This document shows, piece after piece, positions 11,480 through 63,203 of a stretch of DNA of 64,000 nt. The stretch lies in IMG/VR virus record IMGVR_UViG_3300032245_001746, positions 255,858-319,857 of that record, one strand, 5' to 3'. How positions within the stretch are numbered: the first letter of the stretch is position 1; each line of letters starts with the position of its first letter. The position numbers and the translations under genes are program-made. Under the pieces are notes generated by a model that did not search any database, was not told the DNA's origin, and worked only from the letters and a program-made list of their open reading frames with translations.

Positions 11480-11483
11480 AAAA

Positions 11484-16149: not shown

Positions 16150-16168
16150 GCATTTAATCATTGTACAA

Positions 16169-16357: not shown

Positions 16358-16430
16358 GATCAGTCCATTTTGTTTGTTGACTTCTGACATCGTCACATTG
16401 TACAATCAAACTTCATTGATTAAGTGTAAT

Positions 16431-16459
16431 AAAAAACAGGGATGTTTCCACCCCTGTTT
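16431..16459 (-). terminator. Intrinsic terminator
   Basis: AAACAGGG/CCCTGTTT. Confidence 0.8.
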
Positions 16460-16475
16460 CTCAGATCAATTGCCC

Positions 16476-16679: not shown

Positions 16680-16733
16680 TGGAAATTCCTTGAAGTTTTG
16701 ATTGAATTGAACCAACATCAGTCAATTGTACAA

Positions 16734-17015
16734 TCAAACTAATGTGGCACCTTCCGGAATTTGCCATTTTTCATTTTCTGATGGTTTTGGCTTAAACCAT
16801 GTTGATTCAATAGCATCAGAAGATGATTTTGCCATTGAACAAATGGCATTTAATTGCCACATTGCTTCTTTCAAATCATTCCGAGCAGACAAAAATAATC
16901 GAATCAATGTCTCAACATTATCTCGATTCGATACAATTTCATCAATAATGTGTTCAGGTACTTCATCACATTTCTCTGCTTCATCAAGCAGAGATAAAAT
17001 GTTTTGATTTGACAC
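16734..17015 (-). CDS. Hypothetical protein
   Basis: GGAG RBS, GTG start; stop in the repeat. Confidence 0.75.
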   Translation of the reverse strand: MSNQNILSLLDEAEKCDEVPEHIIDEIVSNRDNVETLIRLFLSARNDLKEAMWQLNAICSMAKSSSDAIESTWFKPKPSENEKWQIPEGATLV

Positions 17016-17017
17016 TT

Positions 17018-17302
17018 TTACTCTCCAGGTGGATACTTAGGATCAGGGGCGGGTAAATGTTCTGATGATTTTTCTTTTTTTGGCCAATCATTTTTGGCAT
17101 ATCCGATATGTTGAGCCTGACCGCTTTGAATATCGGTAATGTCAATGATGTTTGACCATGTTCCTGAAATGTGTTTTCTTTCAAAACCAAATTCTTCAGC
17201 GTAATGATCAAGAATCTGGTTTAATGAAAGAAACTCGATTCTATGGACAACAAGGACTGTAAATACCTGATTGTCATAAAATACTACAATGCCATTTTCC
17301 AT
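17018..17302 (-). CDS. Hypothetical protein
   Basis: First ORF after promoter 17325. Confidence 0.75.
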   Translation of the reverse strand: MENGIVVFYDNQVFTVLVVHRIEFLSLNQILDHYAEEFGFERKHISGTWSNIIDITDIQSGQAQHIGYAKNDWPKKEKSSEHLPAPDPKYPPGE

Positions 17303-17341
17303 TGAATTCTCTCATTGGAGACAGATTGTACAATCAAACTC

Positions 17342-17641
17342 TTACCACCAGAAAACGATTTTGTGTGGAATCTTTTTTGTGGGAAGAATGATTTCAAATT
17401 TATCGTATCGAACACGAAACAATTCAACCTCAAAATCCATACTTACAGGATTTACAGGCAAATTTAATGGAGATTCCGTGTTTTTAGCTTTGTATCTTAC
17501 TAATACTCCACGGGGTCCACTGGAGACAGATTCGACTTGATCAATACAATTTTGATCAAATGATCTTCTGAAAGCATCAAGTTTGTCAAAATCTTCTGAT
17601 GTTTTTGCAATAATGCTGATTTTTTCAAAACTCATGTGCAA
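17342..17641 (-). CDS. Hypothetical protein
   Basis: ORF in cassette. Confidence 0.75.
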   Translation of the reverse strand: MHMSFEKISIIAKTSEDFDKLDAFRRSFDQNCIDQVESVSSGPRGVLVRYKAKNTESPLNLPVNPVSMDFEVELFRVRYDKFEIILPTKKIPHKIVFWW

Positions 17642-17674
17642 CTCAGCCTTTTAATTGAGAATCGCCAATTACTG

Positions 17675-17971
17675 TCAATCCATTTTGATTTTTTGAGGGT
17701 TTCCATTTCGGATTGAAAAACGCCATTTTGCGCCAGCCCAAGAAACCACCCAACCTGATTCTGAAATCACTTTACGATTTTCATCGTAAATTTTACCTCC
17801 AATCAAATGTTGTTCCACATAAAGAAAACCCTCTGGATCACATTTTTCATGAAAATTTTCAAGTTGCTTTGCGATTTTTGATAATTGAGATGAAATCTCA
17901 AGTTTTAGTTCAGCAAGTTTTCTTGCTTCAACCAAAGTGGTATAATCATTTGCTTGTGGAAATTTGTTCAT
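17675..17971 (-). CDS. Hypothetical protein
   Basis: ORF in cassette. Confidence 0.75.
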   Translation of the reverse strand: MNKFPQANDYTTLVEARKLAELKLEISSQLSKIAKQLENFHEKCDPEGFLYVEQHLIGGKIYDENRKVISESGWVVSWAGAKWRFSIRNGNPQKIKMD

Positions 17972-18004
17972 TTGTTAGGCTTTCGACAACAAGAGATTGT
18001 ACAA

Positions 18005-18376
18005 TCAAACATTCTTTTCGTCTTGAGGCAAACCCCATGCTCTTTCAATATCAAATTCGTCAAATTGCCAGAGTTCTTCTGGAGAATGTTGCTTTAACAA
18101 TTGATGATTAGCAAAATGACGGTTTTTGATACTAATTGCTGCTCTCAAACCATTTTTCAAGCCTTGCAAATAGGCTTTTTGCCGTTCTTCTTCAATCAAT
18201 TCAAGAATTGTTTTGTTTTGATTGACAGATTCTTCAAATGGTGGTGAAAATCTTGCATCATTCAAATCGAAAAGTCGTGCATTTACAATACTTCCATCAT
18301 GATTTGCAACATGAAATCCATTTTGCTTTTCGAAAGTATCAACAATACGACCCGAACTAATCAGTTTTCTGAACAT
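18005..18376 (-). CDS. Hypothetical protein
   Basis: Start MFRKL; stop in the repeat. Confidence 0.75.
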   Translation of the reverse strand: MFRKLISSGRIVDTFEKQNGFHVANHDGSIVNARLFDLNDARFSPPFEESVNQNKTILELIEEERQKAYLQGLKNGLRAAISIKNRHFANHQLLKQHSPEELWQFDEFDIERAWGLPQDEKNV

Positions 18377-18428
18377 CGTTTTCCCCTTACCAGTTTGAGT
18401 TTGATCCGAACACTGATCAATTGTACAA

Positions 18429-18731
18429 TCAAACTGTAAATCCTGCAAATCTCATCAGATAGATAAATTTACGTTTGATTTTAATCCATAAATAATTCAG
18501 ATTAGATCTGAAATTATTTCTTTGGACCACAGAGAAAGGACTTAATTGAGTTAACACATTTGTTCTCAAGTTAACAGCCCAAAATCGTCCTAGATTTTGA
18601 AATGCATCTCTTGATGATGGAATGTAAAACACTTCACCAACAGAAAGTTGGTTAAGCGTGAAATCAAATCCATGCTTTTTACTGTTTTTTGTGAAAACTT
18701 CATTCAATTTTTGAAGGCTGTTTGATTTCAT
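18429..18731 (-). CDS. Hypothetical protein
   Basis: Start MKSNSL; stop in the repeat. Confidence 0.7.
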   Translation of the reverse strand: MKSNSLQKLNEVFTKNSKKHGFDFTLNQLSVGEVFYIPSSRDAFQNLGRFWAVNLRTNVLTQLSPFSVVQRNNFRSNLNYLWIKIKRKFIYLMRFAGFTV

Positions 18732-18786
18732 CTTGAAATTCCATGAATTGGAAGGTGTTTGTACACAAACATTGTACAATCAAACT

Positions 18787-19104
18787 TTATTTTCGTTCGA
18801 TTTCTACACAATAAATTATCGAACTTCCAGAAGATCCTTGTTCAGAAAACAACCAACCTGCTTTTTCCAACTTTACTTCATTAGCCACATGAAGTTTTTC
18901 TTTCAAATAGATCGTCATTCTTGCATTTTCATCTGCTTTGATATAAAAATCTTTCAAATGAAGAGCAATTTCAGCCAATTGTTCTTCTTCATTTTTCCTT
19001 GTCCGGTTCATGAACCAATTGAATTGTTCATTCGATGACGGAATATTCACCGATTTTTTCATTGTTCGTTGCTCAGAAGTTGTAGAACTTGTTTTCCTGA
19101 CCAT
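18787..19104 (-). CDS. Hypothetical protein
   Basis: AAGGA RBS, MVRKT. Confidence 0.75.
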   Translation of the reverse strand: MVRKTSSTTSEQRTMKKSVNIPSSNEQFNWFMNRTRKNEEEQLAEIALHLKDFYIKADENARMTIYLKEKLHVANEVKLEKAGWLFSEQGSSGSSIIYCVEIERK

Positions 19105-19115
19105 TTTGTTTTCCT

Positions 19116-19328
19116 TCAAACAGAAACCGCAGTTTCTGTAGCATGTGCAACATAAATTGTTGAATTTGGATCTTTTGGATCTTTTGGAAACTGGAAACTC
19201 ATGCCAACTTTAGTGGTTTTTGGATAAAAACCAAACTTGGTCTGAAACTTTTCCGGAGAAAGAGCACAAACTGGAATTCCATTTTCCAATACAACGATAG
19301 CAACTTCGCCTGACATCGTAAGAACCAT
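19116..19328 (-). CDS. Hypothetical protein
   Basis: AAGGA RBS. Confidence 0.75.
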   Translation of the reverse strand: MVLTMSGEVAIVVLENGIPVCALSPEKFQTKFGFYPKTTKVGMSFQFPKDPKDPNSTIYVAHATETAVSV

Positions 19329-19534
19329 GACGATTTTCCTTTGATTTTTTTTGGAAGCTAACCGATGTTGATCAATTGTACAATCAAACTAAAAAAGACA
19401 GATTTCCACGTTGCCCTTCGAAAGATAATTATCTTGATTAGTTACCAATCAAAATAATTATCTTTTCTTCTCACAGCTTCCGTTTCTTTTTAAAGTCGGT
19501 CGCATCTCTGCTTCTATCCAACTTCTGTCTTTTT

Positions 19535-20023
19535 TTAGATCATATTTGCACCAAATTCAGGATATTCAGTACCTCTCATTTCTGAAGGACCGCCATCATA
19601 TTTTGTGTGATGTGGATTTTTCAACAAATGAAATGCAAAATTCCACAACCAATTTCGTTGAAGTTTTGACATTCTTTCATGAAAAGAATGGAATCTTGCA
19701 TAAATGATTCTTTGTGCTTTTTCTTTCAATTCAGCACATTGAACCAACTGAATGTCAAAATGCGTTTTGCCAACAAATTTTCTTAACACACAAACAACTT
19801 GTTGGTCAACATATGTTGCTGGTGCAGCAATGGTTGAATAACCATTTGACAGTAAATCCGAATGTGTTTTTTCTGTGAATTCGACAAAAAAGTCGTAATC
19901 ATTTGGGTTTTTACTTCCAAAGTATCTTGACCCAGTCAGATAAAACAAGACGTTCATCTTATCCAATTCAGCTAATTCAGCTTTAATTGGATCGCACTCA
20001 GCAATTGAGCTTCCACGAATCAT
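19535..20023 (-). CDS. Pol-beta-superfamily nucleotidyltransferase
   Basis: YLTGSRYFG....DYDF (GS-x-DxD) motif. Confidence 0.75.
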   Translation of the reverse strand: MIRGSSIAECDPIKAELAELDKMNVLFYLTGSRYFGSKNPNDYDFFVEFTEKTHSDLLSNGYSTIAAPATYVDQQVVCVLRKFVGKTHFDIQLVQCAELKEKAQRIIYARFHSFHERMSKLQRNWLWNFAFHLLKNPHHTKYDGGPSEMRGTEYPEFGANMI

Positions 20024-20078
20024 CTGAAATTTCCTTGTTTTTTCGCTTTGAATCTCTCGACATCAACACATTGTACAA

Positions 20079-20195
20079 TCAAACTCTGTGAAACCAATCT
20101 TTGATTTTCCAATAACCCGAATGTAAACAAACAAACGGAACGAAAATCAAGAAGAAATAAAAAACCCAACCAGCATGTTTCAAACTTTTAATCAT
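20079..20195 (-). CDS. 38-aa membrane peptide
   Basis: MIKSLKHAGWVFYFFLIFVPF...HRV, TGA in the repeat; below cutoff. Confidence 0.55.
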   Translation of the reverse strand: MIKSLKHAGWVFYFFLIFVPFVCLHSGYWKIKDWFHRV

Positions 20196-20202
20196 AAACC
20201 CT

Positions 20203-20778
20203 CTATTCATAGATTGAAAAGATTGCATTATATGCCTTCATTTCATAGGCAAGTGCATCACTTTCCACCAGAGAATCATTTCCTTCGTTGTAGATCAGAA
20301 AAGAAAGTGTATATTTAATGAATTTTGTGTAATTCTGTCTGCTATGACGATATTCATGTGCTAATGTAACAGCAATGATACCATCAGATTCAGAAAAAAC
20401 AGATTTGTTAACATACAACTTTTTGCTGATAAAGTCGTATTTTGCAAAATACCCCTTATCGTCATTGGTAAATACCAATTCCTTGTTTTCAATCTTTTCC
20501 TTAATCCAAATTGCAATTTTTGGATTAACCTCTTCCAAAATTTGGATAGCATTTTGGAGAGATTCCAGTCTTACCGAATCTGGAGTATTGGTGAAAATAC
20601 TGTATTTGTTTGAAACAATGTGTGGATCAATGTTAATCAAACTTTTGAAGTCATCAATTTCTGAGTCTTTTTTGCAATCAAAAAGAATGAAAGCCAAAAG
20701 ACTCAGACAAATTGTTGCCAACACACTTTTCTTGCAAAAAAATTCAAACATGATTGTTCTCTTCATAAGAGTTTTCAC
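20203..20778 (-). CDS. Putative exported HExxH zinc metallopeptidase
   Basis: N-terminal hydrophobic segment; LAHEYRH ... ESDA. Confidence 0.65.
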   Translation of the reverse strand: MKTLMKRTIMFEFFCKKSVLATICLSLLAFILFDCKKDSEIDDFKSLINIDPHIVSNKYSIFTNTPDSVRLESLQNAIQILEEVNPKIAIWIKEKIENKELVFTNDDKGYFAKYDFISKKLYVNKSVFSESDGIIAVTLAHEYRHSRQNYTKFIKYTLSFLIYNEGNDSLVESDALAYEMKAYNAIFSIYE

Positions 20779-20812
20779 CTTGATTCATATGAAGAGATTG
20801 TACAATCAAACT

Positions 20813-21283
20813 TTAGTTTGTCAAAATTGACTGAATTTCAGGTGCAAACAAATTGGCATTAGTTTCTGGCAAAGTCTCAACAATATGTTTGACAAGCATT
20901 GTTTTTGCTTCTGTCAACATAAGAGACAAATATTCTTGTGTAGCCAGAAAAGAAAAATCGTCTGCAAATCTGTTGAGAAATGCCTGTTTCAGAATTAACG
21001 ATGGAAGCTGATCAGCAATAATGTGTGCAATATTAATCACCAAAATAGGTGAAATAAGCGTGAATTTTGATGATCTTGACCAACTCCAAGTAGCAACACG
21101 ACTGTTCATTCTTGGATTTTTAGTATCCAACATTTCAGTGAATTGATCACATTTTTCATCTCTTGAAATGACAATATATTCAGTTTTCAGAGTGTTTTCT
21201 CCATTATCATGTTGTAAACGCTGTGTTGGAAAAAAATACTTTGAAGTAATTGGTTTCAATGTAAGAAACTCTGAAAGCGTCAT
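20813..21283 (-). CDS. Hypothetical protein
   Basis: Start MTLSEF. Confidence 0.75.
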   Translation of the reverse strand: MTLSEFLTLKPITSKYFFPTQRLQHDNGENTLKTEYIVISRDEKCDQFTEMLDTKNPRMNSRVATWSWSRSSKFTLISPILVINIAHIIADQLPSLILKQAFLNRFADDFSFLATQEYLSLMLTEAKTMLVKHIVETLPETNANLFAPEIQSILTN

Positions 21284-21481
21284 GTTTTTATTCCTAAAAG
21301 AGTTAGTAAAGACACATTGTACAATCAAACTGAATCAAATTCTAAGATTTGTTTGACTCAATAATATCCTGCATTTTTTTGTTGTAAATATCAACTAATT
21401 GTTGATATTCTGTGTTGAAACAATGTTGATTAATTGCGGACGGCATGTTGACCAACACAACCGCCAAACAAATAATAACAA

Positions 21482-21760
21482 TTATTCCATAGATGTGTGT
21501 GAACATGGTTGGTGATCCAAATCAATCGCAGTCAAAATTTTATTCAAGTGAATCCCACAAGAATTGACATATGGTAACACAAAAACTGTGCCAGATTCAC
21601 AATTCAATAACTCTTCTTGCAATTGACTATACCAATTCAGAGTTCTGAATTTATGATCTTCTTTAGAAGCTGATTCCAATTCATCCAAAGCTTCCAACAA
21701 ATTCAGTTCTTTTGAAATTGAAAGATTTTCATCTATCAAAATGAAAAAACGCTTTGTCAT
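21482..21760 (-). CDS. Hypothetical protein
   Basis: ORF on coding strand. Confidence 0.7.
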   Translation of the reverse strand: MTKRFFILIDENLSISKELNLLEALDELESASKEDHKFRTLNWYSQLQEELLNCESGTVFVLPYVNSCGIHLNKILTAIDLDHQPCSHTSME

Positions 21761-21877
21761 GTGAAATCATTTCTTGAAAAAAAAGAATAAAAAACAGTGG
21801 TTCGGAATCGTTTTGTTTTTTACCTAATGTCAATATTATTTTAGACTCAGGTGATTCGTTCCACTGTTTTTAGTTTT

Positions 21878-22183
21878 TCAACGAATAGTTCTCTGAAGAA
21901 AAGTCAAATCAAGTTGATTTCTTTCATTCAATCCAACTGCACGAATCAAATCAATTGTTTGAAAACACAACTTGACCGCTTTGAACACTTCCCAAGGATT
22001 CATACAATTATTCAAAATTTCAACCAACGCATCAGTACGTGGAAGAATCATTCCCATACACACAACAGTTTCACCTGTTTCATCAATAACCATTTTGATC
22101 GCATGATTTCCTGGAAGCTTTTCAATTCCAATCATCGTTCCAAAAATGACATTGTTGTCAGAATCAATGTGAATAATCTGCAC
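21878..22183 (-). CDS. Hypothetical protein
   Basis: AAAGG RBS, GTG start. Confidence 0.7.
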   Translation of the reverse strand: MQIIHIDSDNNVIFGTMIGIEKLPGNHAIKMVIDETGETVVCMGMILPRTDALVEILNNCMNPWEVFKAVKLCFQTIDLIRAVGLNERNQLDLTFLQRTIR

Positions 22184-22243
22184 TTGAATTACCTTTTGTT
22201 GAAAGAATTGTTAGTTCGATGTGAAGGAATTGTACAAGCAAAC

Positions 22244-22477
22244 TCAAAACAAGTTTGTGTAAAAATACTTTGCCAAATTTACACCAGCATATCCCAACAC
22301 TGAACAAAGGAACACAATTACAATCGTTGCAATTACGAAAGCAATTCGATCTTGAATCCAATAATTCTTTGGTTTTTCAAGAAAGATTCTTACCTTATCA
22401 GTTAAAGTAAAAAATGAAGCTGCAATTAACATTCCAATTACAGCATAAAAGAAAATTGAAGTAATCGTGGTCAACAT
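22244..22477 (-). CDS. Two-TM membrane protein
   Basis: AGGAG RBS, MLTTIT. Confidence 0.75.
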   Translation of the reverse strand: MLTTITSIFFYAVIGMLIAASFFTLTDKVRIFLEKPKNYWIQDRIAFVIATIVIVFLCSVLGYAGVNLAKYFYTNLF

Positions 22478-22529
22478 GAAAATCTCCTGAGTTTTGTAAA
22501 CTAACATACACTCATTGTACAATCAAACT

Positions 22530-22808
22530 TCAATCCAGTCTAATTGTATTTCCTTTTAAAAATCCACTTGTTACCGCACCAGTAACAATATGTCCACTTG
22601 GTGATTTTGCCTTGAAACCAGTAGAAAATGTATCGCTTTTTGATTTCATCCAAGGACGCCAACCAGTAATTTCAATTTCAGTGTAACCCTGTTCAGATAA
22701 TACTCTTTTTGTATTATCAGGATCAATTGCACCACCATTTGCAATCAAAATAACAAAAAAGAGTATTATCCCACAAAAGATCATTTCAATCAAACTAATT
22801 CTTTTCAT
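22530..22808 (-). CDS. Membrane-anchored hypothetical protein
   Basis: TM helix then L..QGYT.I.ITGW domain. Confidence 0.75.
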   Translation of the reverse strand: MKRISLIEMIFCGIILFFVILIANGGAIDPDNTKRVLSEQGYTEIEITGWRPWMKSKSDTFSTGFKAKSPSGHIVTGAVTSGFLKGNTIRLD

Positions 22809-22841
22809 TTCACTTTTCCTTTTAAAAACAGACAATCAGAG

Positions 22842-23252
22842 TTAAATGAAAGTTTTCCGAATATTTCCCGTTGATACTTTCCAAGTATAACCCGAATCCT
22901 GACTGTTTTGAGTATCTGAAAATAACTCAAGAATTATTTCGCTCTCATCACATGATTTAATTAACTCTGTTTCAGTTAATAAATCACGAATGGAATTCGT
23001 CTTATTCATTTCATCTTCATCATCCCAACCCATATTTTGCAGGGCTTGACCAAAAATACAACCCTTACAATCTGGTCCAGCCAATTTATTACCATCTATT
23101 GCTGGTCCATTCCAGGAACAAAGAACAACATGGTCAGAAGTGTTATAACGAAAATCAGGGTTTTCGTCTGCCAAACGAACAACTTCTTTTCTCAATTTCT
23201 CAAAAAAATCAAGTTGAGTACCATTACTCAGAATCACTTCTGAAATCTTCAT
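22842..23252 (-). CDS. Family A protein (ENPDF.YN..C...GP..CKGCIFGQALQNMGW..Q..QD.G..W)
   Basis: Paralog motif. Confidence 0.9.
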   Translation of the reverse strand: MKISEVILSNGTQLDFFEKLRKEVVRLADENPDFRYNTSDHVVLCSWNGPAIDGNKLAGPDCKGCIFGQALQNMGWDDEDEMNKTNSIRDLLTETELIKSCDESEIILELFSDTQNSQDSGYTWKVSTGNIRKTFI

Positions 23253-23469
23253 GTTGTATCCTTGTTATTAAGAGTTGGAGTGGAATCAATTATTCCACAC
23301 GTTAATGCTATTTATTCTAAAGTGCGACTCAAAAATGAATGAATAACTACATTTCCACTTTTTCGTGTTTCATAGCAATTCAAACATTCAAATAATCCAA
23401 CACTACATGTTCGAATTAACGTACCAGCCCTTCCATTTCCTGCCTTGCAGGTTTCACACTGATTAAATG

Positions 23470-23916
23470 TCATGGATTTTTACTTGTTTCTTGAAGCAAT
23501 TTTGAAATTCTTTCAATTGCTTTACCCCAGGATGCTCCATTATCCTGATCAACTTGTGTATCCCTAAAAGATACAATCCATTTGTGAGTTCGAGGAGTTA
23601 AAATATCAGCATATTCTGTACACAGTATTTCTGATATATTGTGTCCACAATTCATTTCGTTTTCATCATCCCAACCCATATTTTGCAGGGCTTGACCAAA
23701 AATACAACCCTTACAATCTGGTCCAGCTTGAATTGGTGTCACAGATAAAGATGTTTTCAAAGTTGCTGGACCATTGTAATGGCAAGAAGCAAGCCTTTCA
23801 GAAGTATTATACTGAAAATCAGGATTTTCCGTTCCCAATTTAACTACTTCTACTGCCACTTGCTTTACAAACTCAAGTTCAGAATTGAACTTGGCAATAA
23901 TTTCTTTTAAATTCAT
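23470..23916 (-). CDS. Family A protein
   Basis: Paralog motif. Confidence 0.9.
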   Translation of the reverse strand: MNLKEIIAKFNSELEFVKQVAVEVVKLGTENPDFQYNTSERLASCHYNGPATLKTSLSVTPIQAGPDCKGCIFGQALQNMGWDDENEMNCGHNISEILCTEYADILTPRTHKWIVSFRDTQVDQDNGASWGKAIERISKLLQETSKNP

Positions 23917-23971
23917 GATGTTATCCTTGTGGTTGATGTCACTCTATTGTACAATCAAACTTGATTTGATT

Positions 23972-24151
23972 TTACCACCATTCAGGTATTTCTTGATTTT
24001 TTTGATCTTCTTGATTTACATCAGAAATAACAAAAACTGGTGTTAGATTACCGTTTTGTTTCAATTTGATGTACATGCCTTTTACGATATATTTAATTTC
24101 ACCTTGATACAACAAAACTGTATCACCTGTCTGAAGAATAACGTTTGACAT
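23972..24151 (-). CDS. 59-aa hypothetical protein
   Basis: MSNVILQTGDTV...PEWW; below cutoff. Confidence 0.6.
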   Translation of the reverse strand: MSNVILQTGDTVLLYQGEIKYIVKGMYIKLKQNGNLTPVFVISDVNQEDQKNQEIPEWW

Positions 24152-54760: not shown

Positions 54761-55543
54761 TTAAATGAGAAGTCCATGATCATTATAATCTGTATCATCT
54801 TTTGATGATGATTTAATCAAACGATTGTTTTCGTCATATATGTTCTTTTGCCAATAACCGTCTGAACTCTTATAATAGGTCACATTTCCAAACATGTTAT
54901 ATTCAACATAAAATCCAATAAGATTCAACAATTCATTTTGATCAGTAATTTCTCTTACAATACGAATTTTATTTGTTACTGTTTTATCATATTCTGTTTC
55001 TGAATCGCCCAAATCTTCAATTTCAAGCAATTTAAAGTTATATTGATGAGGGTAATATTTCAACACATCTTTAGCATTTTTGCAATAATGAAAGCCATAA
55101 AAACATGGAAGTGGCTTTCCTGATAATTCATAAGTTTCCCCGATTTTAAACTCATGTCCACGACAAACATAGTTATATGTACCTTTATATCCTTTTTTTT
55201 CTTCTTTATAATTTGTCACTTGATTATCTAGCAATTTTTGCATTTTATTTGTTGTTTCGATTGCATCTTGTTTTGCTAAATTCATAGCTTTTTCATCGGT
55301 TCCATAAAACACTTCTGTATTTGACATAGAACCAGATGAAAGTTTAAATCTCACACAACCCATAAAACCTTTGCCGTGAAATGCACGAACATGTGCAATA
55401 AAAGCATAATAATATTCTGTTTCGTAAAAAACAGAACCTTTGTGATGATAAACCACTGTGTTAATTGTTGGATGTTCATTCATTTTTTCAGGATGAAGAG
55501 TGTTTTGCCACAAATTTTCATTATCATAGAAGTTGTCAGACAT
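54761..55543 (-). CDS. Family B domain fused to an unrelated N-terminal domain
   Basis: KGYKGTYNYVC motif starts at about residue 117. Confidence 0.85.
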   Translation of the reverse strand: MSDNFYDNENLWQNTLHPEKMNEHPTINTVVYHHKGSVFYETEYYYAFIAHVRAFHGKGFMGCVRFKLSSGSMSNTEVFYGTDEKAMNLAKQDAIETTNKMQKLLDNQVTNYKEEKKGYKGTYNYVCRGHEFKIGETYELSGKPLPCFYGFHYCKNAKDVLKYYPHQYNFKLLEIEDLGDSETEYDKTVTNKIRIVREITDQNELLNLIGFYVEYNMFGNVTYYKSSDGYWQKNIYDENNRLIKSSSKDDTDYNDHGLLI

Positions 55544-56912: not shown

Positions 56913-57362
56913 TCAACATGAATGAACAGAGGTTTTTGATTTGTCATAATCATTTTGGTTTTTTCTTTCCTTTAAAGGAAAAATTGCTTCACCCCAAGAT
57001 TGACCTGCATCTTGATTCATTTGAACTGGATTTAAATAGTAAAAATTAAAAGAAGTTTCTCCAAAATCAGCAAGCAATGCCGAAATTGTTTTATCGCTTT
57101 TCATTTCATAATCATCATCCCAACCCATATTTTGTAAAGCCTGACCAAAAATGCATCCTTTGCATTCTGGACCAAGAATTATATTTACATTTGATTTGGA
57201 TTTTGCTGATCCATTATAATAACATTGAGCATCTAGTTTTCGATAGGCTGTATTGTAAATAAAATCGGGATTTTCTGTTCCCAACTTAATTACTTCTGCA
57301 TTTAATGAATCAGCAAATTCATTAACAGATGAATGTTTCCCAATAACTTCTTTTAAATTCAT
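56913..57362 (-). CDS. Family A protein
   Basis: Paralog motif. Confidence 0.9.
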   Translation of the reverse strand: MNLKEVIGKHSSVNEFADSLNAEVIKLGTENPDFIYNTAYRKLDAQCYYNGSAKSKSNVNIILGPECKGCIFGQALQNMGWDDDYEMKSDKTISALLADFGETSFNFYYLNPVQMNQDAGQSWGEAIFPLKERKNQNDYDKSKTSVHSC

Positions 57363-57388
57363 TTTTTTCTCCAATTAATATTATGTAA

Positions 57389-57796: not shown

Positions 57797-58405
57797 TCAA
57801 ACTTTTGAATATGTTTCACGTTTTGTTATTTCATATCCATTTTCATCATATGTTGATTCAGAAAAATATCCACTTGAATTTTTGTGTGTCAACCGACATC
57901 CATTGTGATCATATGTTGATTCAGAAAAATATCCATTTGAATCCTTATAGTTAAGAAGAGAACCATTTTCATTGTGTGTTTGTTCATACGAAAATCCTCT
58001 GGAATGTTTGTATGTCGACACATTGCCATTTTTGTCATATGTATATTCATACCAATATCCATAAGAATCTTTACATCTAAACAATTTACCATTTTCATTA
58101 TAAATTCTATGACATCCAATTAATTGAATTAATTCATCTGGATCATTAATTTCTCGAATAATTCTTATCTTGTCTGTACAAGATTTATCATTTTCTTCAA
58201 TTGTGAATAAACCTAAATCTTCAATTTCCAATAATTTGAATCGCCTTGTATATGAATAATGTTTCAATGTATTTCTAGCATTTTTGCAATAATGAAATCC
58301 ACGTGAACACATAATTGGCTTTTCTGACAATTCATAAGTTTGACCAATTTCAAATTTAAAATCGCGACAAACAAAATCGTAGGTAGCTTTATATCCAATT
58401 TTCAT
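57797..58405 (-). CDS. Family B protein with 24-aa tandem repeats
   Basis: Paralog motifs; SSGYFSESTYD repeats 72 bp apart; stop in the repeat. Confidence 0.9.
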   Translation of the reverse strand: MKIGYKATYDFVCRDFKFEIGQTYELSEKPIMCSRGFHYCKNARNTLKHYSYTRRFKLLEIEDLGLFTIEENDKSCTDKIRIIREINDPDELIQLIGCHRIYNENGKLFRCKDSYGYWYEYTYDKNGNVSTYKHSRGFSYEQTHNENGSLLNYKDSNGYFSESTYDHNGCRLTHKNSSGYFSESTYDENGYEITKRETYSKV

Positions 58406-58643: not shown

Positions 58644-59042
58644 CTAAGAAATTAGTTCACTAATAGATTTTTTCCAAGATCCACCTAAATCCTGGCAAGC
58701 CTGAGTTCGTCTGAACTTTTCAAGCAAATCCTGATATTTTATTTCATAATTAAGAATTAAAGTATTTAAATACGTGTCAATTCTAAGTGACATTCCTAAT
58801 TCATCATAATTATTGCATCCCATATTTTGTAGGGCTTGACCGAAAATACAACCATTACATTTTGGACCTACAATAGATCCTATTTTGTTTTTTGCTGGAC
58901 CGTAGTATGTACAAAATCCTTCTCTATTAGGATTATAAACAAAATCAGGATTGCTTGTTCCTAATTTAATTACTTCTTGCTTTAAAGCTTCAAGAAATTC
59001 AAGTTTTGAATTAAACTTATTGCAAATATCAATTAACTTCAT
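58644..59042 (-). CDS. Family A protein
   Basis: Paralog motif (CNGCIFGQAL); start trimmed to MKLID. Confidence 0.9.
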   Translation of the reverse strand: MKLIDICNKFNSKLEFLEALKQEVIKLGTSNPDFVYNPNREGFCTYYGPAKNKIGSIVGPKCNGCIFGQALQNMGCNNYDELGMSLRIDTYLNTLILNYEIKYQDLLEKFRRTQACQDLGGSWKKSISELIS

Positions 59043-59076
59043 CGTTATTAATCTTTTCTTGAATAGGACATTATAA

Positions 59077-59376
59077 CTAGAAATTTGTAACACACAAATT
59101 GTGTCGTTCAATCTTTTTTGATAAAAGCAAACAGATTTTGTCCAATAAGACAAAATCTGTTTTTTCTTTTGAATTTAAAGAGGCACATTCAATATTAAAT
59201 GCACAGTTTGAATTCATAACACAATTAATACGAAATAATTGTTTTCCATATCTGAATTGATAATAAAAATTCTTAGAACGCAAATTTAATATTCCAAAAA
59301 TTTTAGGATTGGAATATCCACTTATCAATAAAGTATCTTTTTCTCGTATCCAATTGTACAATGTTATTAAATTCAT
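59077..59376 (-). CDS. Hypothetical protein
   Basis: Coupled to the 576-aa gene. Confidence 0.65.
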   Translation of the reverse strand: MNLITLYNWIREKDTLLISGYSNPKIFGILNLRSKNFYYQFRYGKQLFRINCVMNSNCAFNIECASLNSKEKTDFVLLDKICLLLSKKIERHNLCVTNF

Positions 59377-61106
59377 TATTGCTCCTTGAATAAATTAACA
59401 AATGTATCCTTGTTTACTTTATTCACAGATAAATCAATATCTGCTTCGGCTACATCAGAAACAATTTCTGCTCCAGCATCTGATAAAATTGTTTTCAAAC
59501 CGACTTGAAACAATGAGTTTTCAACTAATGCAGTTAATCCATTAGCCTTAGATGAAACTCTAGCATTTCCACTTCCGCCATTTACTACTACAAAATAATT
59601 AGATCCCAATATTCCCAGCGTTGTTTGTTTCTGAGAAGAAACTACATATTCATCAATAATAACATTATTTGGGTCCATTAAATATTGTTTTGAAATATCT
59701 TCTCCATCTCCAACAATTAACTTAAATTTAGTGTTTTCTTGACCATAGAATATATTTGCTGTAACTAAACTAAATTGATCACCACGATTATTATCGCAAT
59801 GAATGTATTCTACAGCACCATTAACTGCATTCGTAATATCTCCACTGTATGTTAATCCATTTCTCGTCCATGATGAATTCCATCCCACCTTAGAATTATT
59901 AATATCCATTGATGACAAATCAATATCATGAGCACCCCAACTATTTTCCCAATAAATCCCAACTACAAGTCGTTTGCCATAAATTTTAGTGCCCACAGGT
60001 ATATTGCCAACAAACATTTTTTCCGAAGTTGGCAACGCATAATCTACATTAGATGGAATATAGATTCGCTTACCAGAAAGATTAAATCTCTTGCGTAGAT
60101 ATTGTGTTAAAAATGAATAATTATTCAGACACACATCTGTATTTGGATTGGTATTGTTTTCAACAAATGTTTTTCCATTTCTTACTCTATAACTAAAGCT
60201 TTTTTGACCATTAACACGTGTAGCAACAGCGTTAATAGCTTTAAATAAAGAAAAAATTGTTGCATTATCAAGCCAATGAATATCATTTTCAGTAAGTTTA
60301 GTTGTTGTTACACAATTTAAAGCATTTACTGGAATAGGTTTGTGATACTTCTTAGATAGTTTTGACAACTTGTTGATTAATGCTGGACAAAAAGATTTCA
60401 TTGCCAAAAACAATGGTTTATATCGATTGAAAATCGATGATACTTTGTCCAATCCAAATCGTTCAAACAATTCGGTTGGATCATAATATGATTTCTTCAT
60501 TAATTCAATTGATGATTGATTAACAATAAGAAGTGTAGAACCAGTTTTCTTAAAAAACACATAACGAAATAAATCCATCACATTACTTGGAACAATTCCG
60601 TATCGGTCCATAATACGAATTGTTGCTTCTTTATTTTTGACGGAAAAACCATCATTAAACTTAACATTTAACTCTTGCAATAAATCAAGAATTAAATTAA
60701 TTGTTTCTTCTTTGAGTGCCAATCCAGAATTGAGCATGTTCATACATTTATTTTTCAATTCTTCAGAGGTACACGCTTTAATCACACGTACTTTTAATTT
60801 TTGATCAGGAATATTATGAACTTCTTCTGGAATATACATTTCTCCCTCGAACATATTTCCATATGTCGAAATGTAATGCAAAACTTGATCCATCAATCGC
60901 TTTAGTGTATCACCAGAACTTGCAAATGATTTGTAAAATCCTGCATTCAATTGCTTTGGTGTCAAATTTTTAGAATTGAAATATGTTTCAACTGCTCTTT
61001 GTGCATAAAGAGTATTTGGCATAAATACATAGCCATCGTTATTTACGATAATATCTTTGTTTGATTCTTTTGCCAAAACAACACCAAATAATTCAAGGCT
61101 TTTCAT
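59376..61106 (-). CDS. 576-aa protein with helical N-terminal region and TerD-like C-terminal domain
   Basis: GIYW...DIDLS...VGWN...YSGDIT.A..GA.EYI resembles TerD-type beta-sandwich motifs. Confidence 0.6.
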   Translation of the reverse strand: MKSLELFGVVLAKESNKDIIVNNDGYVFMPNTLYAQRAVETYFNSKNLTPKQLNAGFYKSFASSGDTLKRLMDQVLHYISTYGNMFEGEMYIPEEVHNIPDQKLKVRVIKACTSEELKNKCMNMLNSGLALKEETINLILDLLQELNVKFNDGFSVKNKEATIRIMDRYGIVPSNVMDLFRYVFFKKTGSTLLIVNQSSIELMKKSYYDPTELFERFGLDKVSSIFNRYKPLFLAMKSFCPALINKLSKLSKKYHKPIPVNALNCVTTTKLTENDIHWLDNATIFSLFKAINAVATRVNGQKSFSYRVRNGKTFVENNTNPNTDVCLNNYSFLTQYLRKRFNLSGKRIYIPSNVDYALPTSEKMFVGNIPVGTKIYGKRLVVGIYWENSWGAHDIDLSSMDINNSKVGWNSSWTRNGLTYSGDITNAVNGAVEYIHCDNNRGDQFSLVTANIFYGQENTKFKLIVGDGEDISKQYLMDPNNVIIDEYVVSSQKQTTLGILGSNYFVVVNGGSGNARVSSKANGLTALVENSLFQVGLKTILSDAGAEIVSDVAEADIDLSVNKVNKDTFVNLFKEQ

Positions 61107-61131
61107 GATTTTTCTTTTCTTTTTAAAAAAT

Positions 61132-61297
61132 GGGCGAGAAGTAATTGAATTTAGAAAATTTTTTTATAGGAACTTCTTTTGCCCTAAAACTAAAAGAGAC
61201 GAAGAGTAAATTGCATAGTCGTTTAATAGGAACTCTTTTTGTCTCAAATTAAGATGAAGAGTAATTTACCAAAAAAATAGGAACTCTTTTTATCTTA
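61132..61297 (-). ncRNA. Three tandem covarying hairpins in the 5' leader of the 576-aa gene
   Basis: Units 61132-61184, 61196-61245, 61250-61297. Confidence 0.75.
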
Positions 61298-61352
61298 ATC
61301 ATCTATCCATTGTACAACCAAACTTGATAAATGGTAACACTTTTTTTAGAAC

Positions 61353-61682
61353 TTACATGTTATCATTATTTTTTTTAATGAAATTTGATTCATCTAACAC
61401 GTGAATCATAATTACTACTAAATCATCAATTTTAAATTCATTTAATGGTGACGTACATAAACCACCACTCCAACTATCTGTTGATGCCCAATTTTCTCCA
61501 ATTATATCACACTTTTCATCACAAGATGAAAGTTTGACAGGTTTAATTTTTGCAAGTTTTAATAATTCTCCACTTTTATTATCATCGACATAACCAGAAC
61601 GATAAAGATGAGGAATCACACATTTGTTTATGTGTGCAATTATTTTCTTGCGTGCTTTTCTAATTGAAGAAATTTCGCTCAT
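61353..61682 (-). CDS. Hypothetical protein
   Basis: After tRNA-Lys. Confidence 0.75.
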   Translation of the reverse strand: MSEISSIRKARKKIIAHINKCVIPHLYRSGYVDDNKSGELLKLAKIKPVKLSSCDEKCDIIGENWASTDSWSGGLCTSPLNEFKIDDLVVIMIHVLDESNFIKKNNDNM

Positions 61683-61710
61683 AATTACTTTCTAAATCAA
61701 GTTAATGAAG

Positions 61711-61783
61711 TGGTGCCGGTGGGAATCGAACCCACGACCATTGGATTAAAAGTCCAGTGCTCTACCAACTGAGCTACAACACC
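61711..61783 (-). tRNA. tRNA-Lys(UUU), third copy, no CCA
   Basis: GGTGTTG/CGGCACC acceptor, CTTTTAA loop. Confidence 0.95.
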
Positions 61784-61802: not shown

Positions 61803-62162
61803 TCAAACTTCAAATTTACATAAATGTCTATATAATTCAATATTTATTAAAATTTGATGTACGTGAATATCATTTGCTACAATTTCTAATTTTTTAATTT
61901 CTTTAAGATAATAATTACATCTATATTCTGCCCATTTTTTGGGAGATAAATCAAAATTTTCTGGTTTGCGTTCCCACAGTTCTTTTGCTTTTTCTAAAGT
62001 AATTATTTCTCCAAATAGCCATCCAGTTTTTTTACCAACATTATTTTCAATAAATTTCTCAAATTCTTTTTGAATTTCTTTAGGTGTTGATTCATAATAT
62101 TTTTCAATACACGAAAGAATTCTTTGCTTTGTTACTTGTACATAACCTATTGGATTATTCAT
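61803..62162 (-). CDS. Hypothetical protein
   Basis: Ends FEV-TGA in the repeat. Confidence 0.75.
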   Translation of the reverse strand: MNNPIGYVQVTKQRILSCIEKYYESTPKEIQKEFEKFIENNVGKKTGWLFGEIITLEKAKELWERKPENFDLSPKKWAEYRCNYYLKEIKKLEIVANDIHVHQILINIELYRHLCKFEV

Positions 62163-62703
62163 TTTCTTCTTTCAATTGTTTTCTAACATTTATTAAGGAA
62201 AAACCTAAAAGATTTTTTCCTTTCCAATTTTTGGGATTTTTTACCAAATTGTTTTCTTCTTTTAATCCAATTCCCCAAATTTTATCGTATGGACTTGCTT
62301 CAACAAGGATTAAATCATTTGTTGAAATTAAAAATTCTTTTAAAGAAGAGTTTTGTTTGAATTTTTCCAAATTACCTTTAGTTACAATTTTTACGCATTC
62401 TTGCTCCCAAATTGTTTCATTAAAATTTTCAACTTTTCTTCCAAATGATTTTGCTTCTTTTGGATCGGTTGAGTTAATAATTTTTTCAAATGATTTTTGA
62501 TCATTAAACAATTTAGCCTTTGATGCCATCATCCAATGTTCTGCTGTTGCATATGAAACATTATCTACTACAAATTTTGAAGGATACCATTGACTTAAAC
62601 ATGCTTTTGTAATAGACAAGCCTGATTCAAAATGCATCCAGAAATATAAATAATCAAATTTAGTTCCACTTTCACATTCATTAATAAGTGTGTGTAAATC
62701 CAT
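62155..62703 (-). CDS. NADAR family (YbiA-like) protein
   Basis: LSQWY..F......TAEH.MMA.KA.LF.D; EASPYD.IWGIG; G.NLLG..L..VR. Confidence 0.92.
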   Translation of the reverse strand: MDLHTLINECESGTKFDYLYFWMHFESGLSITKACLSQWYPSKFVVDNVSYATAEHWMMASKAKLFNDQKSFEKIINSTDPKEAKSFGRKVENFNETIWEQECVKIVTKGNLEKFKQNSSLKEFLISTNDLILVEASPYDKIWGIGLKEENNLVKNPKNWKGKNLLGFSLINVRKQLKEENE

Positions 62704-63203
62704 TAAATTGACCACCAATCTTTATGAAGAAAATCAACATTGTTTTTTGAATACAACATTTCCCATTCTGGACTTGTTTCTGCATCATCATACAAATATT
62801 TGATTTTTGCTTTCAATCCACGATGTTTATTTGCGTGCGACCTGAAATATTGATCTTTATCTTTCATTTCCAGTAGTAATTTAACATATGGATTATTCAT
62901 CCCATAATTCTTGGAAATTTCATCAAGTGCTTTTTTAGCTGCAATTTTAATTGCAATATGAGTATTTGACACTCTTTCTTCAGGAGTTATTCGCACCAAT
63001 ACTGGATTAATTTGATATTCATAATATTTGTTTTCCAATGGCATCAAGCTTTCGAAATATACAGCGAATAAATCATTGCAAAAATGTTCTTGTTGTGGTT
63101 TATGATTCACTTTAATTTCAGATGGTTGATGTTTTTTGTTGTAAAAGTGATTAATTAATGCAACAGAAATTAATAGTGCAAAAACAGAAAGTGCTACCAA
63201 CAT
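62703..63203 (-). CDS. Membrane-anchored hypothetical protein
   Basis: N-terminal TM. Confidence 0.75.
   Translation of the reverse strand: MLVALSVFALLISVALINHFYNKKHQPSEIKVNHKPQQEHFCNDLFAVYFESLMPLENKYYEYQINPVLVRITPEERVSNTHIAIKIAAKKALDEISKNYGMNNPYVKLLLEMKDKDQYFRSHANKHRGLKAKIKYLYDDAETSPEWEMLYSKNNVDFLHKDWWSI

What the first reader, a model, noticed from the sequence alone, without database searches (positions are those of the whole stretch)
59376..61324. Triple covarying hairpin leader in front of a 576-aa TerD-like protein: candidate RNA-protein module
Seen: between the promoter (61309) and the ATG (61106) are three units. On the transcript each has an outer stem (UAAGAU/AUCUUA; GAGAC/GUCUC; GGGC/GCCC, all different), an AAA-versus-C bulge, an inner stem (AAGAGU/ACUCUU twice, AGAAGU/ACUUCU once) and a loop starting UCCUAU and ending AAUU(U). 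Structure and loop ends are conserved while the stems covary. Known: TerD-family domains occur in stress/anti-phage-associated systems, and tandem leader hairpins are typical of protein-binding sites. Inference: the protein, or a host factor, binds these hairpins, giving autoregulation or a ribonucleoprotein analogous to Ro60/Y RNA.
Basis: partly seen in the sequence, partly recalled or inferred. Interest (0 to 1): 0.8.

Follow-up and report, generated by a model that had tools for sequence, protein, structure and literature searches.

The report
Hairpin RNAs partnered with TerD-domain protein
Three small bulged RNA hairpins in front of a phage gene belong to a widespread, apparently undescribed RNA family that always travels with one uncharacterised protein family, often beside RNA-repair and tRNA genes, so the pair probably forms an RNA-protein particle that works like the Ro60/Y RNA particle without being related to it.

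Summary
Three hairpins with the same architecture lie between a promoter-like site and the 576-aa ORF. Each has an outer stem, an AAA bulge opposite a C bulge, a 6-bp inner stem, and a loop running UCCUAU...AWU. This is not a local oddity. A covariance model built from such units finds 254 copies in 94 homologous loci, all beside the gene and on its strand. It finds nothing else in this phage or in three whole bacterial genomes. In 151 Flavobacteriales genomes, the same 6 carry both RNA and protein and 145 carry neither. The stems covary and include G-U pairs. In relatives the loop is a cargo slot holding AU-rich filler, stable hairpins or tRNA-like modules, and the motif also replaces the anticodon loop of tRNA-like genes. 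Units lie upstream, downstream or divergent (a eukaryotic contig), or inside phage tRNA arrays far from the gene. The protein has a basic helical N-domain with no recognisable fold and an acidic TerD-fold C-domain. It is not TROVE/Ro60. Bacterial copies sit between RtcB, RlaP and Pnkp/Hen1 RNA-repair genes. Best reading: a Ro60/Y-RNA-like particle built from unrelated parts. Binding and function are inferred, not shown.

The parts
61309..61337 (-). Promoter-like site: -35 TTACCA, 17-nt spacer, -10 TACAAT. It would start transcription a few bases before unit 1.
   Evidence: Consensus scan. The site is retained with small changes in the two close relatives L001 and L002. It is a consensus match only; no transcript-end data exist.
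61248..61299 (-). Hairpin unit 1: 8-bp outer stem, AAA bulge (61291-61289), inner stem AAGAGU (61288-61283) pairing with ACUCUU (61262-61257), C bulge (61256), and a 20-nt loop starting UCCUAU.
   Evidence: Sequence. The minimum-energy fold equals this structure, z -2.66. Model R1 scores it 57.1 bits, E 2e-14.
61196..61245 (-). Hairpin unit 2: outer stem GAGAC/GUCUC, AAA bulge, inner stem AAGAGU/ACUCUU, C bulge (61201), 24-nt loop.
   Evidence: Sequence. Fold z -2.98. R1 50.8 bits.
61131..61185 (-). Hairpin unit 3: outer stem GGGC/GCCC, AAA bulge, inner stem AGAAGU/ACUUCU, C bulge (61136), 29-nt AU-rich loop. A U-run follows at 61130-61125, 19 nt before the ATG.
   Evidence: Sequence. Fold z -3.39. 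R1 54 bits.
59376..61106 (-). 576-aa ORF, the presumed protein partner. It belongs to a family of about 580-640-aa proteins with no Pfam, PHROG, NCBIfam or PADLOC assignment.
   Evidence: ORF list. No family hits. More than 1350 homologues. 1278 representatives of 50%-identity clusters.
60072..61106 (-). N-terminal domain (aa 1-345): mostly helical and basic, with invariant R181, R228, K230, K237 and R309. Proposed RNA-binding part.
   Evidence: AF2 models with pLDDT 79.7 and 80.8. No PDB fold match above noise. pI 9.4, family median 9.2. Invariant residues.
59526..59981 (-). C-terminal beta-sandwich (aa 376-527) with the TerD fold; acidic.
   Evidence: VIA-align Z 10.4 to 2qz7_B and Z 10.1 to 2kxt (both TerD); the next hit scores 5.8. 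AFDB and Atlas neighbours carry TerD annotations. The C-terminal part (aa 346-576) has pI 4.8.
61710..61783 (-). tRNA-Lys(UUU) gene about 410 nt upstream on the same strand. This is context: the module usually lies in or next to tRNA/tmRNA gene clusters in phages.
   Evidence: ARAGORN. The same kind of neighbourhood is seen in L006, L007, L009, L010, S-CRM01 and the giant-phage tRNA arrays.

Best explanation
The three hairpins are genes for, or transcript segments of, a conserved small structured RNA.

**RNA design (shown by comparison).** The invariant core is a 3-nt/1-nt bulge pair, a 6-bp helix ending in G-C and U-A, and UCCUA on the loop's 5' side. I infer that this core is the docking site for the protein encoded next to it. 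The outer stem and the terminal loop are free to vary. The loop serves as a cargo slot. In this phage it holds only AU-rich filler. In relatives it holds tRNA-like modules.

**Protein (fold and charge shown, binding inferred).** I infer that the basic helical N-domain binds the core. The acidic TerD-fold C-domain would serve as a metal- or partner-binding adaptor.

**Function (inferred from gene neighbourhood).** Together they would form a particle that acts on or near tRNAs and broken RNAs, as a scaffold or gate for RNA repair and quality control. This is the role Ro60/Y RNA plays next to RtcB in other bacteria. In a phage it would protect or manage the tRNA pool during infection.

**Feedback (inferred).** The units are co-transcribed with the gene, and the last unit sits 10-26 nt before the start codon in most loci. 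Binding there probably also feeds back on the protein's own translation.
For: **Structure**

- 95.1% of cells are paired against 76.3% in shuffles.
- 9 of 11 pairs show compensatory changes, and covariation is 0.658 against 0.284.
- Sliding the partner columns collapses pairing to 39-55%.
- G-U occurs 15 times at one pair, and all 254 hits lie on the gene's strand. This points to RNA, not duplex DNA.

**Specific partnership**

- R1 hits lie only beside the gene in 481 kb of loci, in this phage and in three whole bacterial genomes of 3.9-6.6 Mb.
- In 151 genomes of one order, the same 6 have both RNA and protein and 145 have neither.
- A DNA-pattern scan of viral contigs ran the test in reverse. 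53 loci had the motif confirmed, and 28 of them had the protein adjacent on the same strand. None of the 27 chance pattern matches had the protein.

**Acting in trans**

- Units lie downstream of the gene in L105, S-CRM01 and Phass-1.
- A unit lies on the opposite strand in a eukaryotic contig.
- Units sit flush between tRNA genes in the arrays of giant phages. The two near-complete giant genomes checked (424 and 411 kb) carry a unit yet encode the protein outside the held stretch around it.

**Cargo**

- T-arm plus mini-acceptor modules, permuted tRNA-like units, and tRNA-model hits of 46-61 bits whose anticodon loop is replaced by the motif.

**Context**

- Chryseobacterium: RtcB - RNAs - gene - RlaP - R2K - RlaP.
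- Marivirga: Hen1 - Pnkp - DUF5677 - RNAs - gene - DUF5677 - RlaP - DUF559 gene - RlaP.
- RtcB lies within 1.5 kb in 54 of 80 genome loci from several genera.

**Protein**

- Basic N-domain, acidic TerD-fold domain.

**Purifying selection**

- The leader is 96% identical among relatives whose proteins are 90-93% identical.
- Inside the hairpins, every difference lies in a loop interior or the middle bulge base.
Against: - No experiment or read data show binding, processing or even stable accumulation of the RNAs. Metatranscriptome contigs were uninformative.
- The N-domain has no recognised RNA-binding fold.
- The window's own hairpins carry no tRNA-like cargo.
- The held 63% of this phage genome has no RtcB, no RlaP and no T4-type (Rnl1) RNA ligase.
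- One locus (L008) has the protein but no unit within 3 kb.
- One complete 35.5-kb phage has a good unit but no protein.
- Co-occurrence shows a functional link, not necessarily physical contact. A host factor could be the binder.
- Many genome loci are Chryseobacterium, so the RtcB count is phylogenetically inflated.
Confidence: 0.6

Rival explanations
1. The hairpins are only a cis-acting autoregulatory leader. The protein binds its own 5' UTR and represses translation or causes termination. There is no separate RNA function.
For: - In the window and most loci the array lies between promoter and ATG.
- The last unit ends 10-26 nt before the start codon across very distant relatives.
- A U-run follows unit 3.
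Against: - Units lie downstream of the gene (L105; one in S-CRM01; five in Phass-1, 1.3 kb away).
- A unit lies on the opposite strand in a eukaryotic contig.
- Units lie inside tRNA arrays in giant phages, and two near-complete giant genomes encode the protein outside the stretch that holds their unit.
- Units lie inside tRNA-like genes.
- Two to six copies with tRNA-like cargo are not needed for an operator.
Confidence: 0.12
2. The motif is a cut-and-join signal. The protein would be an endonuclease that cleaves at the bulges or internal loop. RtcB would then reseal the ends, removing the motif from intron-bearing tRNA-like genes and circularising the permuted ones. This would be a bacterial and phage counterpart of bulge-helix-bulge tRNA splicing.
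For: - The motif sits exactly at the anticodon-loop position of genes scoring 46-61 bits with the tRNA model.
- Permuted tRNA-like units are flanked by the motif (L013).
- RtcB, the splicing ligase of archaea and eukaryotes, is the commonest neighbour.
Against: - After notional removal of the motif, no consistent 7-nt anticodon loop with U33 and a purine at 37 is left, so the products would not decode. I checked this by hand on L079, L067 and L013.
- Most units, including all three in the window, have no tRNA part at all.
- The bulge geometry (3 nt/1 nt, 6-bp helix) is not the 3-4-3 bulge-helix-bulge.
- The protein shows no nuclease fold or motif.
Confidence: 0.1
3. The hairpins are protein-independent RNA elements. 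They would act as stabilisers, processing punctuation or leaky terminators, and they travel with the gene only because they belong to its transcript.
For: - Hairpins followed by U-runs.
- Placement flush with tRNA genes, where RNase P and RNase Z cut.
Against: - Generic stabilisers or terminators do not keep an invariant internal-loop sequence and bulge geometry across cyanophages, Bacteroidota and a eukaryote.
- They would not co-occur one-to-one with a single protein family genome-wide.
- They would not persist when encoded away from the gene.
Confidence: 0.06
4. The repeats act as DNA: operators, recombination sites or iterons. The core GAAGTTCCTATA of unit 3 happens to resemble one arm of the yeast FRT site.
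For: - The inner arms form an inverted repeat.
- The resemblance to an FRT arm is from my memory, not a test.
Against: - The outer arms keep complementarity but not sequence.
- G-U pairs are frequent on the gene strand, which would be C-A on the other strand.
- Orientation always follows the gene or tRNA strand.
- Reversed-connectivity and permuted forms preserve the helix only as a folded single strand.
- No recombinase lies nearby.
Confidence: 0.02

Closest known systems
Ro60 (bacterial Rsr) with Y RNAs such as YrlA, including the Salmonella rsr-yrlBA-rtcBA operon
   Same: - A roughly 60-kDa protein sits next to one or several small RNAs.
- Each RNA has a bulged stem as the presumed protein site and a variable distal module.
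- That module is often a tRNA mimic in which the anticodon arm is replaced by the protein-binding stem.
- The genes neighbour RtcB RNA-repair genes and also occur in phages (PMC4201824; PMC7790460).
- A 1-nt C bulge facing a 3-nt bulge around a short conserved helix is also a feature of vertebrate Y RNA stems. That point is from my own knowledge of Green et al. 1998 and is a lead, not a test.
   Different: - The protein has no TROVE ring and no vWA domain. It has an unassigned helical domain plus a TerD sandwich.
- The RNA core sequence (A-N-A / NNNNGU-UCCUA) differs from the bacterial Ro60 motif GNCGAAN0-1G (PMC4201824).
- The Rfam Y RNA models do not reach threshold.
- Units come in tandem arrays of 2-6.
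- The motif also occurs with reversed connectivity inside tRNA-like genes.
SPFH/Band-7 scaffold with a tRNA-like RNA in RNA-repair operons (Burroughs and Aravind 2016, NAR 44:8525)
   Same: A non-enzymatic scaffold protein is paired with a cognate tRNA-like non-coding RNA beside RNA ligase and RlaP genes.
   Different: The protein family is different. I could not read that paper (not held), so I cannot exclude that the TerD-domain family is mentioned there. What I say about it rests on my memory of its abstract.
TerD family proteins (Klebsiella TerD 2kxt, Streptomyces SCO6318 2qz7)
   Same: - The C-terminal 150 residues share the fold (Z about 10).
- They keep DxDLS-like and SGD-like acidic motifs. 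The comparison with TerD calcium sites is from my own knowledge.
   Different: - The Pfam TerD model does not match.
- Classical TerD proteins are single-domain, sit in ter operons, and have no known RNA partner.
Bulge-helix-bulge introns and permuted tRNA genes of archaea and the red alga Cyanidioschyzon
   Same: - A helix flanked by bulges sits at the anticodon loop of tRNA-like genes.
- There are permuted 3'-half/5'-half gene orders.
- An RtcB ligase is nearby.
   Different: - The geometry is not 3-4-3.
- No splicing endonuclease homologue is present.
- The products would lack a normal anticodon loop.
- Most units carry no tRNA part.
Protein-binding operator hairpins in leaders (ribosomal-protein leaders, MS2 coat-protein operator)
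   Same: A small bulged hairpin lies close to the start codon of the gene for the protein that presumably binds it.
   Different: Here the hairpin also exists as free-standing copies far from any start codon and carries cargo modules.

Membership tests
Ro60/TROVE proteins | TROVE domain (helical-repeat ring, Pfam PF05731) detectable by sequence | tested here: not met
   Pfam scan to E 1 gave no family. A family profile searched against all PDB sequences gave no Ro60.
Ro60/TROVE proteins | Ring-shaped helical-repeat fold plus C-terminal vWA domain | tested here: not met
   Fold searches with the full model and with the N-domain model returned no Ro60 entry; the best N-domain Z was 5.6. The C-domain is a TerD sandwich, not vWA.
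Y RNA / YrlA (Rfam RF00019, RF02553) | Match to the family covariance model at or above the gathering score | tested here: not met
   The window leader gave no Y RNA hit even at E 10. The best hit in a relative was 28.4 bits against a gathering score of 69, and it spanned two neighbouring tRNA-like genes.
Y RNA / YrlA | Conserved Ro60-binding sequence in the stem (bacterial GNCGAAN0-1G) | tested here: not met
   The consensus of 45 units is A-N-A, NNNNGU, UCCUAU ... AWU, ACNNNN, C. The motif definition is from PMC4201824.
Y RNA / YrlA | Modular build: protein-binding stem formed by the two ends, plus a tRNA-like distal domain | tested here: inconclusive
   Met in relatives (L013, L046 and others). 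Not met in the window's three units, whose loops are 20-29 nt of AU-rich sequence.
TerD domain family | Match to Pfam PF02342 | tested here: not met
   No Pfam hit at E up to 1.
TerD domain family | TerD beta-sandwich fold | tested here: met
   Z 10.4 (2qz7_B) and 10.1 (2kxt) over residues 376-527; the next unrelated hit scored 5.8.
Bulge-helix-bulge tRNA introns | Two 3-nt bulges separated by a 4-bp helix at the exon-intron borders, leaving a normal anticodon loop after excision | tested here: not met
   The bulges are 3 nt and 1 nt and face each other, followed by a 6-bp helix. No consistent anticodon loop is left, by inspection of L079, L067 and L013.
tRNA genes | Cloverleaf recognised by ARAGORN or the Rfam tRNA model | tested here: not met
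   None of the window's units is called. Only some relatives' units embed tRNA-like parts.
Any Rfam 15 family | Covariance-model match | tested here: not met
   Only chance-level hits with E of 0.8 or more in the window leader and in the Zobellia leader.

The most novel reading that the evidence does not exclude
The bulged helix is the recognition signal of a protein-dependent RNA cut-and-rejoin pathway in bacteria and phages. The TerD-domain protein, or a partner it recruits, would cleave at the motif and RtcB would reseal the ends. Motif-bearing tRNA-like precursors, including circularly permuted ones, would thus be matured or re-topologised. That would be a bacterial analogue of archaeal and eukaryotic tRNA splicing and permuted-tRNA maturation.
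Probability: 0.08. Interest if true: 0.95.

Novelty: new variant of a known kind. Interest (0 to 1): 0.85.

Why it matters
If the pairing is real, this is an apparently independent invention of the Ro60/Y-RNA design. The design is a scaffold protein docked on a bulged RNA stem that presents exchangeable cargo, often a tRNA mimic, and is placed beside RNA-repair enzymes.

- **It names two unknowns at once.** The protein family has more than a thousand sequence clusters in phages, Bacteroidota and at least one eukaryote. The RNA family is absent from Rfam.
- **It gives a testable role to a TerD-fold domain outside tellurite-resistance operons.**
- **It explains unannotated gaps in phage tRNA arrays.**
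- **It opens the RtcB/RlaP/Pnkp-Hen1 repair systems of Bacteroidota to experiment,** with a defined RNA handle and clear mutations to make.
- **It may be useful as a tool.** The cargo-slot design could serve as a small protein-recruiting RNA tag.

Tried and rejected
- **Protein family libraries.** Pfam, PHROGs, NCBIfam and PADLOC gave no family for the protein.
- **Rfam.** Scans of the leader and of relatives gave only noise, tRNA hits and one sub-threshold YrlA hit.
- **Fold searches.** Foldseek against the PDB found nothing for either the full model or the N-domain model. A family profile against PDB sequences also found nothing.
- **Loop-loop ('kissing') pairing between neighbouring units.** A few striking cases such as L028 suggested it. 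Across 100 unit pairs, however, the longest complementary run equals that of shuffled loops (3.66 against 3.66), so I rejected it as a general feature.
- **Whole-leader stability.** It is not significant (z -1.10). Only the single units stand out.
- **Rebuilding an anticodon loop after notional removal of the motif.** No consistent result, so the tRNA-like parts are mimics.
- **RNA evidence.** Three wastewater metatranscriptome runs hold a roughly 93% identical relative at low, even depth. This gives no information on transcript ends. The only peak is cross-mapping on the tRNA-Lys gene.
- **RNA-repair genes in this phage.** RtcB, RlaP and the T4-type (Rnl1) RNA ligase were not found in the held part of this genome, which is 63% complete.
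- **Resemblance of the core to an FRT arm.** I judge it coincidental (see the DNA-site rival).
- **Literature.** Six searches found no description of this RNA or protein. Two key reviews could not be read.
Full report
**1. The observation**

On the - strand, between a promoter-like TTACCA-17-TACAAT (61337-61309) and the ATG at 61106, lie three hairpins of one design:

| Unit | Coordinates | Outer stem | Inner stem |
|---|---|---|---|
| U1 | 61299-61248 | AUUAAGAU/AUCUUAAU | AAGAGU/ACUCUU |
| U2 | 61245-61196 | GAGAC/GUCUC | AAGAGU/ACUCUU |
| U3 | 61185-61131 | GGGC/GCCC | AGAAGU/ACUUCU |

Each has an outer stem, an AAA bulge, a 6-bp inner stem, a loop beginning UCCUAU and ending AUU/UUU, and a single C bulge on the return strand. 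Each unit adopts this shape as its minimum-energy fold, with z-scores of -2.7 to -3.4. The leader as a whole is not unusually stable. The sequence core is unique to this spot in the held genome.

The window is the last 64 kb of a 319,857-bp, 30% G+C viral record judged 63% complete. It carries dispersed tRNA genes, one of them about 410 nt upstream of the array.

**2. The motif is a conserved RNA tied to one protein family**

The 576-aa ORF has more than 1350 homologues of similar length and 1278 representatives of 50%-identity clusters. They occur in uncultured phages, in cyanophages S-CRM01 and S-CBWM1, in gut phage Phass-1, and in the chromosomes of many Bacteroidota. All are unannotated.

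In Zobellia galactanivorans the protein is 48% identical. Two units of the same design precede the gene with entirely different stems, one including a G-U pair. A simple structural scan found one or more units upstream in 93 of 94 loci.

I aligned 45 non-redundant units. The stated structure gives:

- 95.1% paired cells against 76.3% in column shuffles;
- compensatory changes at 9 of 11 pairs;
- a covariation score of 0.658 against 0.284;
- a collapse to 39-55% pairing when partners are slid.

The two pairs that never vary (G-C and U-A at the top of the inner helix) adjoin the invariant UCCUA. One caveat applies. The units were collected with a filter that required some pairing, but observed pairing is far above that filter, and the slide control does not depend on it.

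G-U is common on this strand (15 of 45 at one pair).

The covariance model R1 finds 254 hits in 94 loci (481 kb, both strands). All are on the gene's strand and next to the gene. It finds only the three leader units in this phage, and only the units at the locus in three whole bacterial genomes.

In 151 genomes sampled from one order, R1 and the protein profile hit the same six genomes and no others.

I also ran the test in reverse with a loose DNA pattern scanned over viral contigs. Of the 80 loci held from that scan:

- R1 confirmed the motif in 53 loci;
- 28 of those had the protein adjacent on the same strand;
- 27 were chance pattern matches, and none of them had the protein.

**3. The RNA is modular and not bound to the 5' leader**

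Most loops are 10-30 nt. Some loops hold stable UUCG-type hairpins.

About ten Flavobacteriia units hold a 51-nt module made of a T-arm with a canonical T-loop, a tetraloop-closed mini-helix and a GG-containing tail. This is the elbow of a tRNA.

L013 has two units whose loop is a circularly permuted tRNA-like body. The minimum-energy fold of the one I folded shows T-arm, closed acceptor stem, D-arm and an anticodon-like stem that continues into the motif.

In Chryseobacterium, Tenacibaculum, Winogradskyella and several phages the connectivity is reversed. A gene scoring 46-61 bits with the Rfam tRNA model has its anticodon loop replaced by the motif, and the outer stem is closed by a small loop.

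Both connectivities give the same three-dimensional plan, which is that of the bacterial Y RNA YrlA (PMC4201824).

Position relative to the gene also varies:

- four units upstream plus one just downstream in S-CRM01, and five units 1.3 kb downstream in Phass-1;
- two units between the stop codon and a terminator in L105;
- a unit on the opposite strand about 420 nt upstream in a eukaryotic contig whose neighbours include an Arp1-like gene;
- units sitting flush between tRNA genes in giant-phage tRNA arrays. They recur between two tRNA-Asp genes or just before tRNA-Val. The two near-complete giant genomes I checked (424 and 411 kb) carry a unit yet encode the protein outside the held stretch around it.

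Flanking tRNA processing would release such hairpins as free small RNAs. That is inference.

**4. The protein**

AlphaFold models (pLDDT about 80) show a mostly helical N-terminal 345 residues and a beta-sandwich at residues 376-527.

The sandwich matches TerD structures at Z 10.4 and 10.1, well above the next hit at 5.8. AlphaFold DB and ESM Atlas neighbours carry TerD labels. The Pfam TerD model does not fire.

The N-domain has no fold match above noise and none to Ro60. A family profile finds nothing in PDB sequences.

The N-domain is basic (pI 9.4; family median 9.2) and has invariant Arg and Lys residues. The TerD part is acidic (pI 4.8; family median 4.95).

**5. Neighbourhood**

- Chryseobacterium defluvii: RtcB, the RNAs, the gene, RlaP, an R2K ATP-grasp protein, RlaP. 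A WYL regulator lies nearby.
- Marivirga: Hen1, Pnkp, DUF5677, the RNAs, the gene, DUF5677, RlaP, a DUF559-family gene, RlaP.
- RtcB lies within 1.5 kb in 54 of 80 genome loci, including Fluviicola, Flavobacterium, Aquimarina and Winogradskyella. RlaP lies within reach in 21. Chryseobacterium is over-represented in these counts.
- RlaP is a nucleotidyltransferase that acts on cleaved tRNA ends (bioRxiv 10.64898/2025.12.29.696909).
- In phages the module sits in tRNA clusters and three times beside a tmRNA gene.
- In this window the neighbours are unknowns plus a NADAR-domain gene. The held part of the genome has no RtcB, no RlaP and no T4-type (Rnl1) RNA ligase.

**6. Interpretation**

*Shown:* a structured RNA motif under selection, strand-specific, with a one-to-one genomic partnership to one protein family across phages, bacteria and a eukaryote. 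It has exchangeable cargo that is often tRNA-like, and it is frequently placed in RNA-repair operons and tRNA arrays.

*Inferred:*

- The basic N-domain docks on the bulged helix core.
- The particle acts as a scaffold or gate in tRNA and RNA repair or surveillance, as Ro60/Y RNA does beside RtcB (PMC7790460).
- The start-proximal unit also gives feedback on translation.
- For the phage, a likely use is managing its own and the host's tRNAs when host defences attack them. This is speculative.

The rivals are ranked in their own section with evidence and refutation tests: leader-only autoregulation, a cut-and-rejoin signal with RtcB, protein-independent elements, and DNA sites.

**7. Comparison and novelty**

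It works like Ro60/Y RNA but fails every membership test for TROVE proteins and for Y RNA models. It shares only a fold with TerD proteins. It is not in Rfam 15.

I found no paper describing it. I could not read Burroughs and Aravind 2016 or the 2020 Ro60 review, so prior mention cannot be excluded.

I rate it a new variant of a known kind: an analogous scaffold-RNA particle made from unrelated protein and RNA families.

**8. Limits**

- There is no binding, expression or phenotype data.
- The metatranscriptome contigs were uninformative.
- The window's own units lack cargo.
- Two exceptions exist: L008 has the protein without a unit within 3 kb, and one complete 35.5-kb phage has a unit but no protein.

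Noticed in passing
L106:2523-2584 (- strand) and L106:3001-4842; the same arrangement in L107: A 613-aa homologue (33% identical) lies in a eukaryotic contig. Its neighbours include C2, PH, clathrin-adaptor, Rpc31 and Arp1-like genes. One good hairpin unit lies on the opposite strand about 420 nt upstream. The module therefore seems to have entered a eukaryote with its RNA.
   Followed up: partly
L160:9193-9254 (- strand): A complete 35.5-kb phage with terminal repeats carries one well-formed unit about 50 nt before an ORF but has no homologue of the protein. It might use its host's protein.
   Followed up: partly
L121:3373-3433 and 12198-12260; L144:4315-4375; L169:5569-5631; L133:187-248; L178:1524-1586: In giant-phage tRNA arrays the hairpins fill gaps between tRNA genes at recurring places: between two tRNA-Asp genes, or just before tRNA-Val.
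   Followed up: partly
L006:4732-4988; L004:3530-3806; L098:5961-6399: tmRNA genes lie directly beside the module in three unrelated phage contigs.
   Followed up: no
L097:2288-2434 (S-CRM01 ORF g173c, opposite strand): This annotated small ORF overlaps two of the hairpin units on the other strand and is probably not a gene.
   Followed up: no
window 62155-62718 (- strand): An ORF with a strong NADAR-domain match (E 5e-54) lies about 1 kb upstream of the module. This family includes ADP-ribose-removing enzymes.
   Followed up: no
window 8696-61783 (- strand): Seven dispersed tRNA genes, including three tRNA-Lys(UUU) and two tRNA-Leu(UAA).
   Followed up: no
window 54761-55543 and 57797-58405; 56913-57374 and 58644-59153: Two pairs of paralogous small ORFs (DUF7666 and phrog_572) alternate downstream of the module.
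   Followed up: no
window 59129-59162: A near-perfect 15-bp palindromic, terminator-like hairpin reads the same on both strands. It lies about 215 nt downstream of the 576-aa ORF's stop, inside or after the next small ORFs.
   Followed up: no
own genome outside the window, + strand near G000:C1:91884-91965 and 122823-122905: Two near-identical copies of a roughly 60-nt sequence turned up by chance in a word search. Their nature is unknown.
   Followed up: no
window 4001-24000: G+C is 0.33-0.38 here against 0.27-0.31 in most of the rest of the window.
   Followed up: no
window 61346-61371: A relative seen in a wastewater metatranscriptome contig and in L002 carries about 125 extra bases at this point, between the upstream ORF and the promoter-like site.
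   Followed up: no
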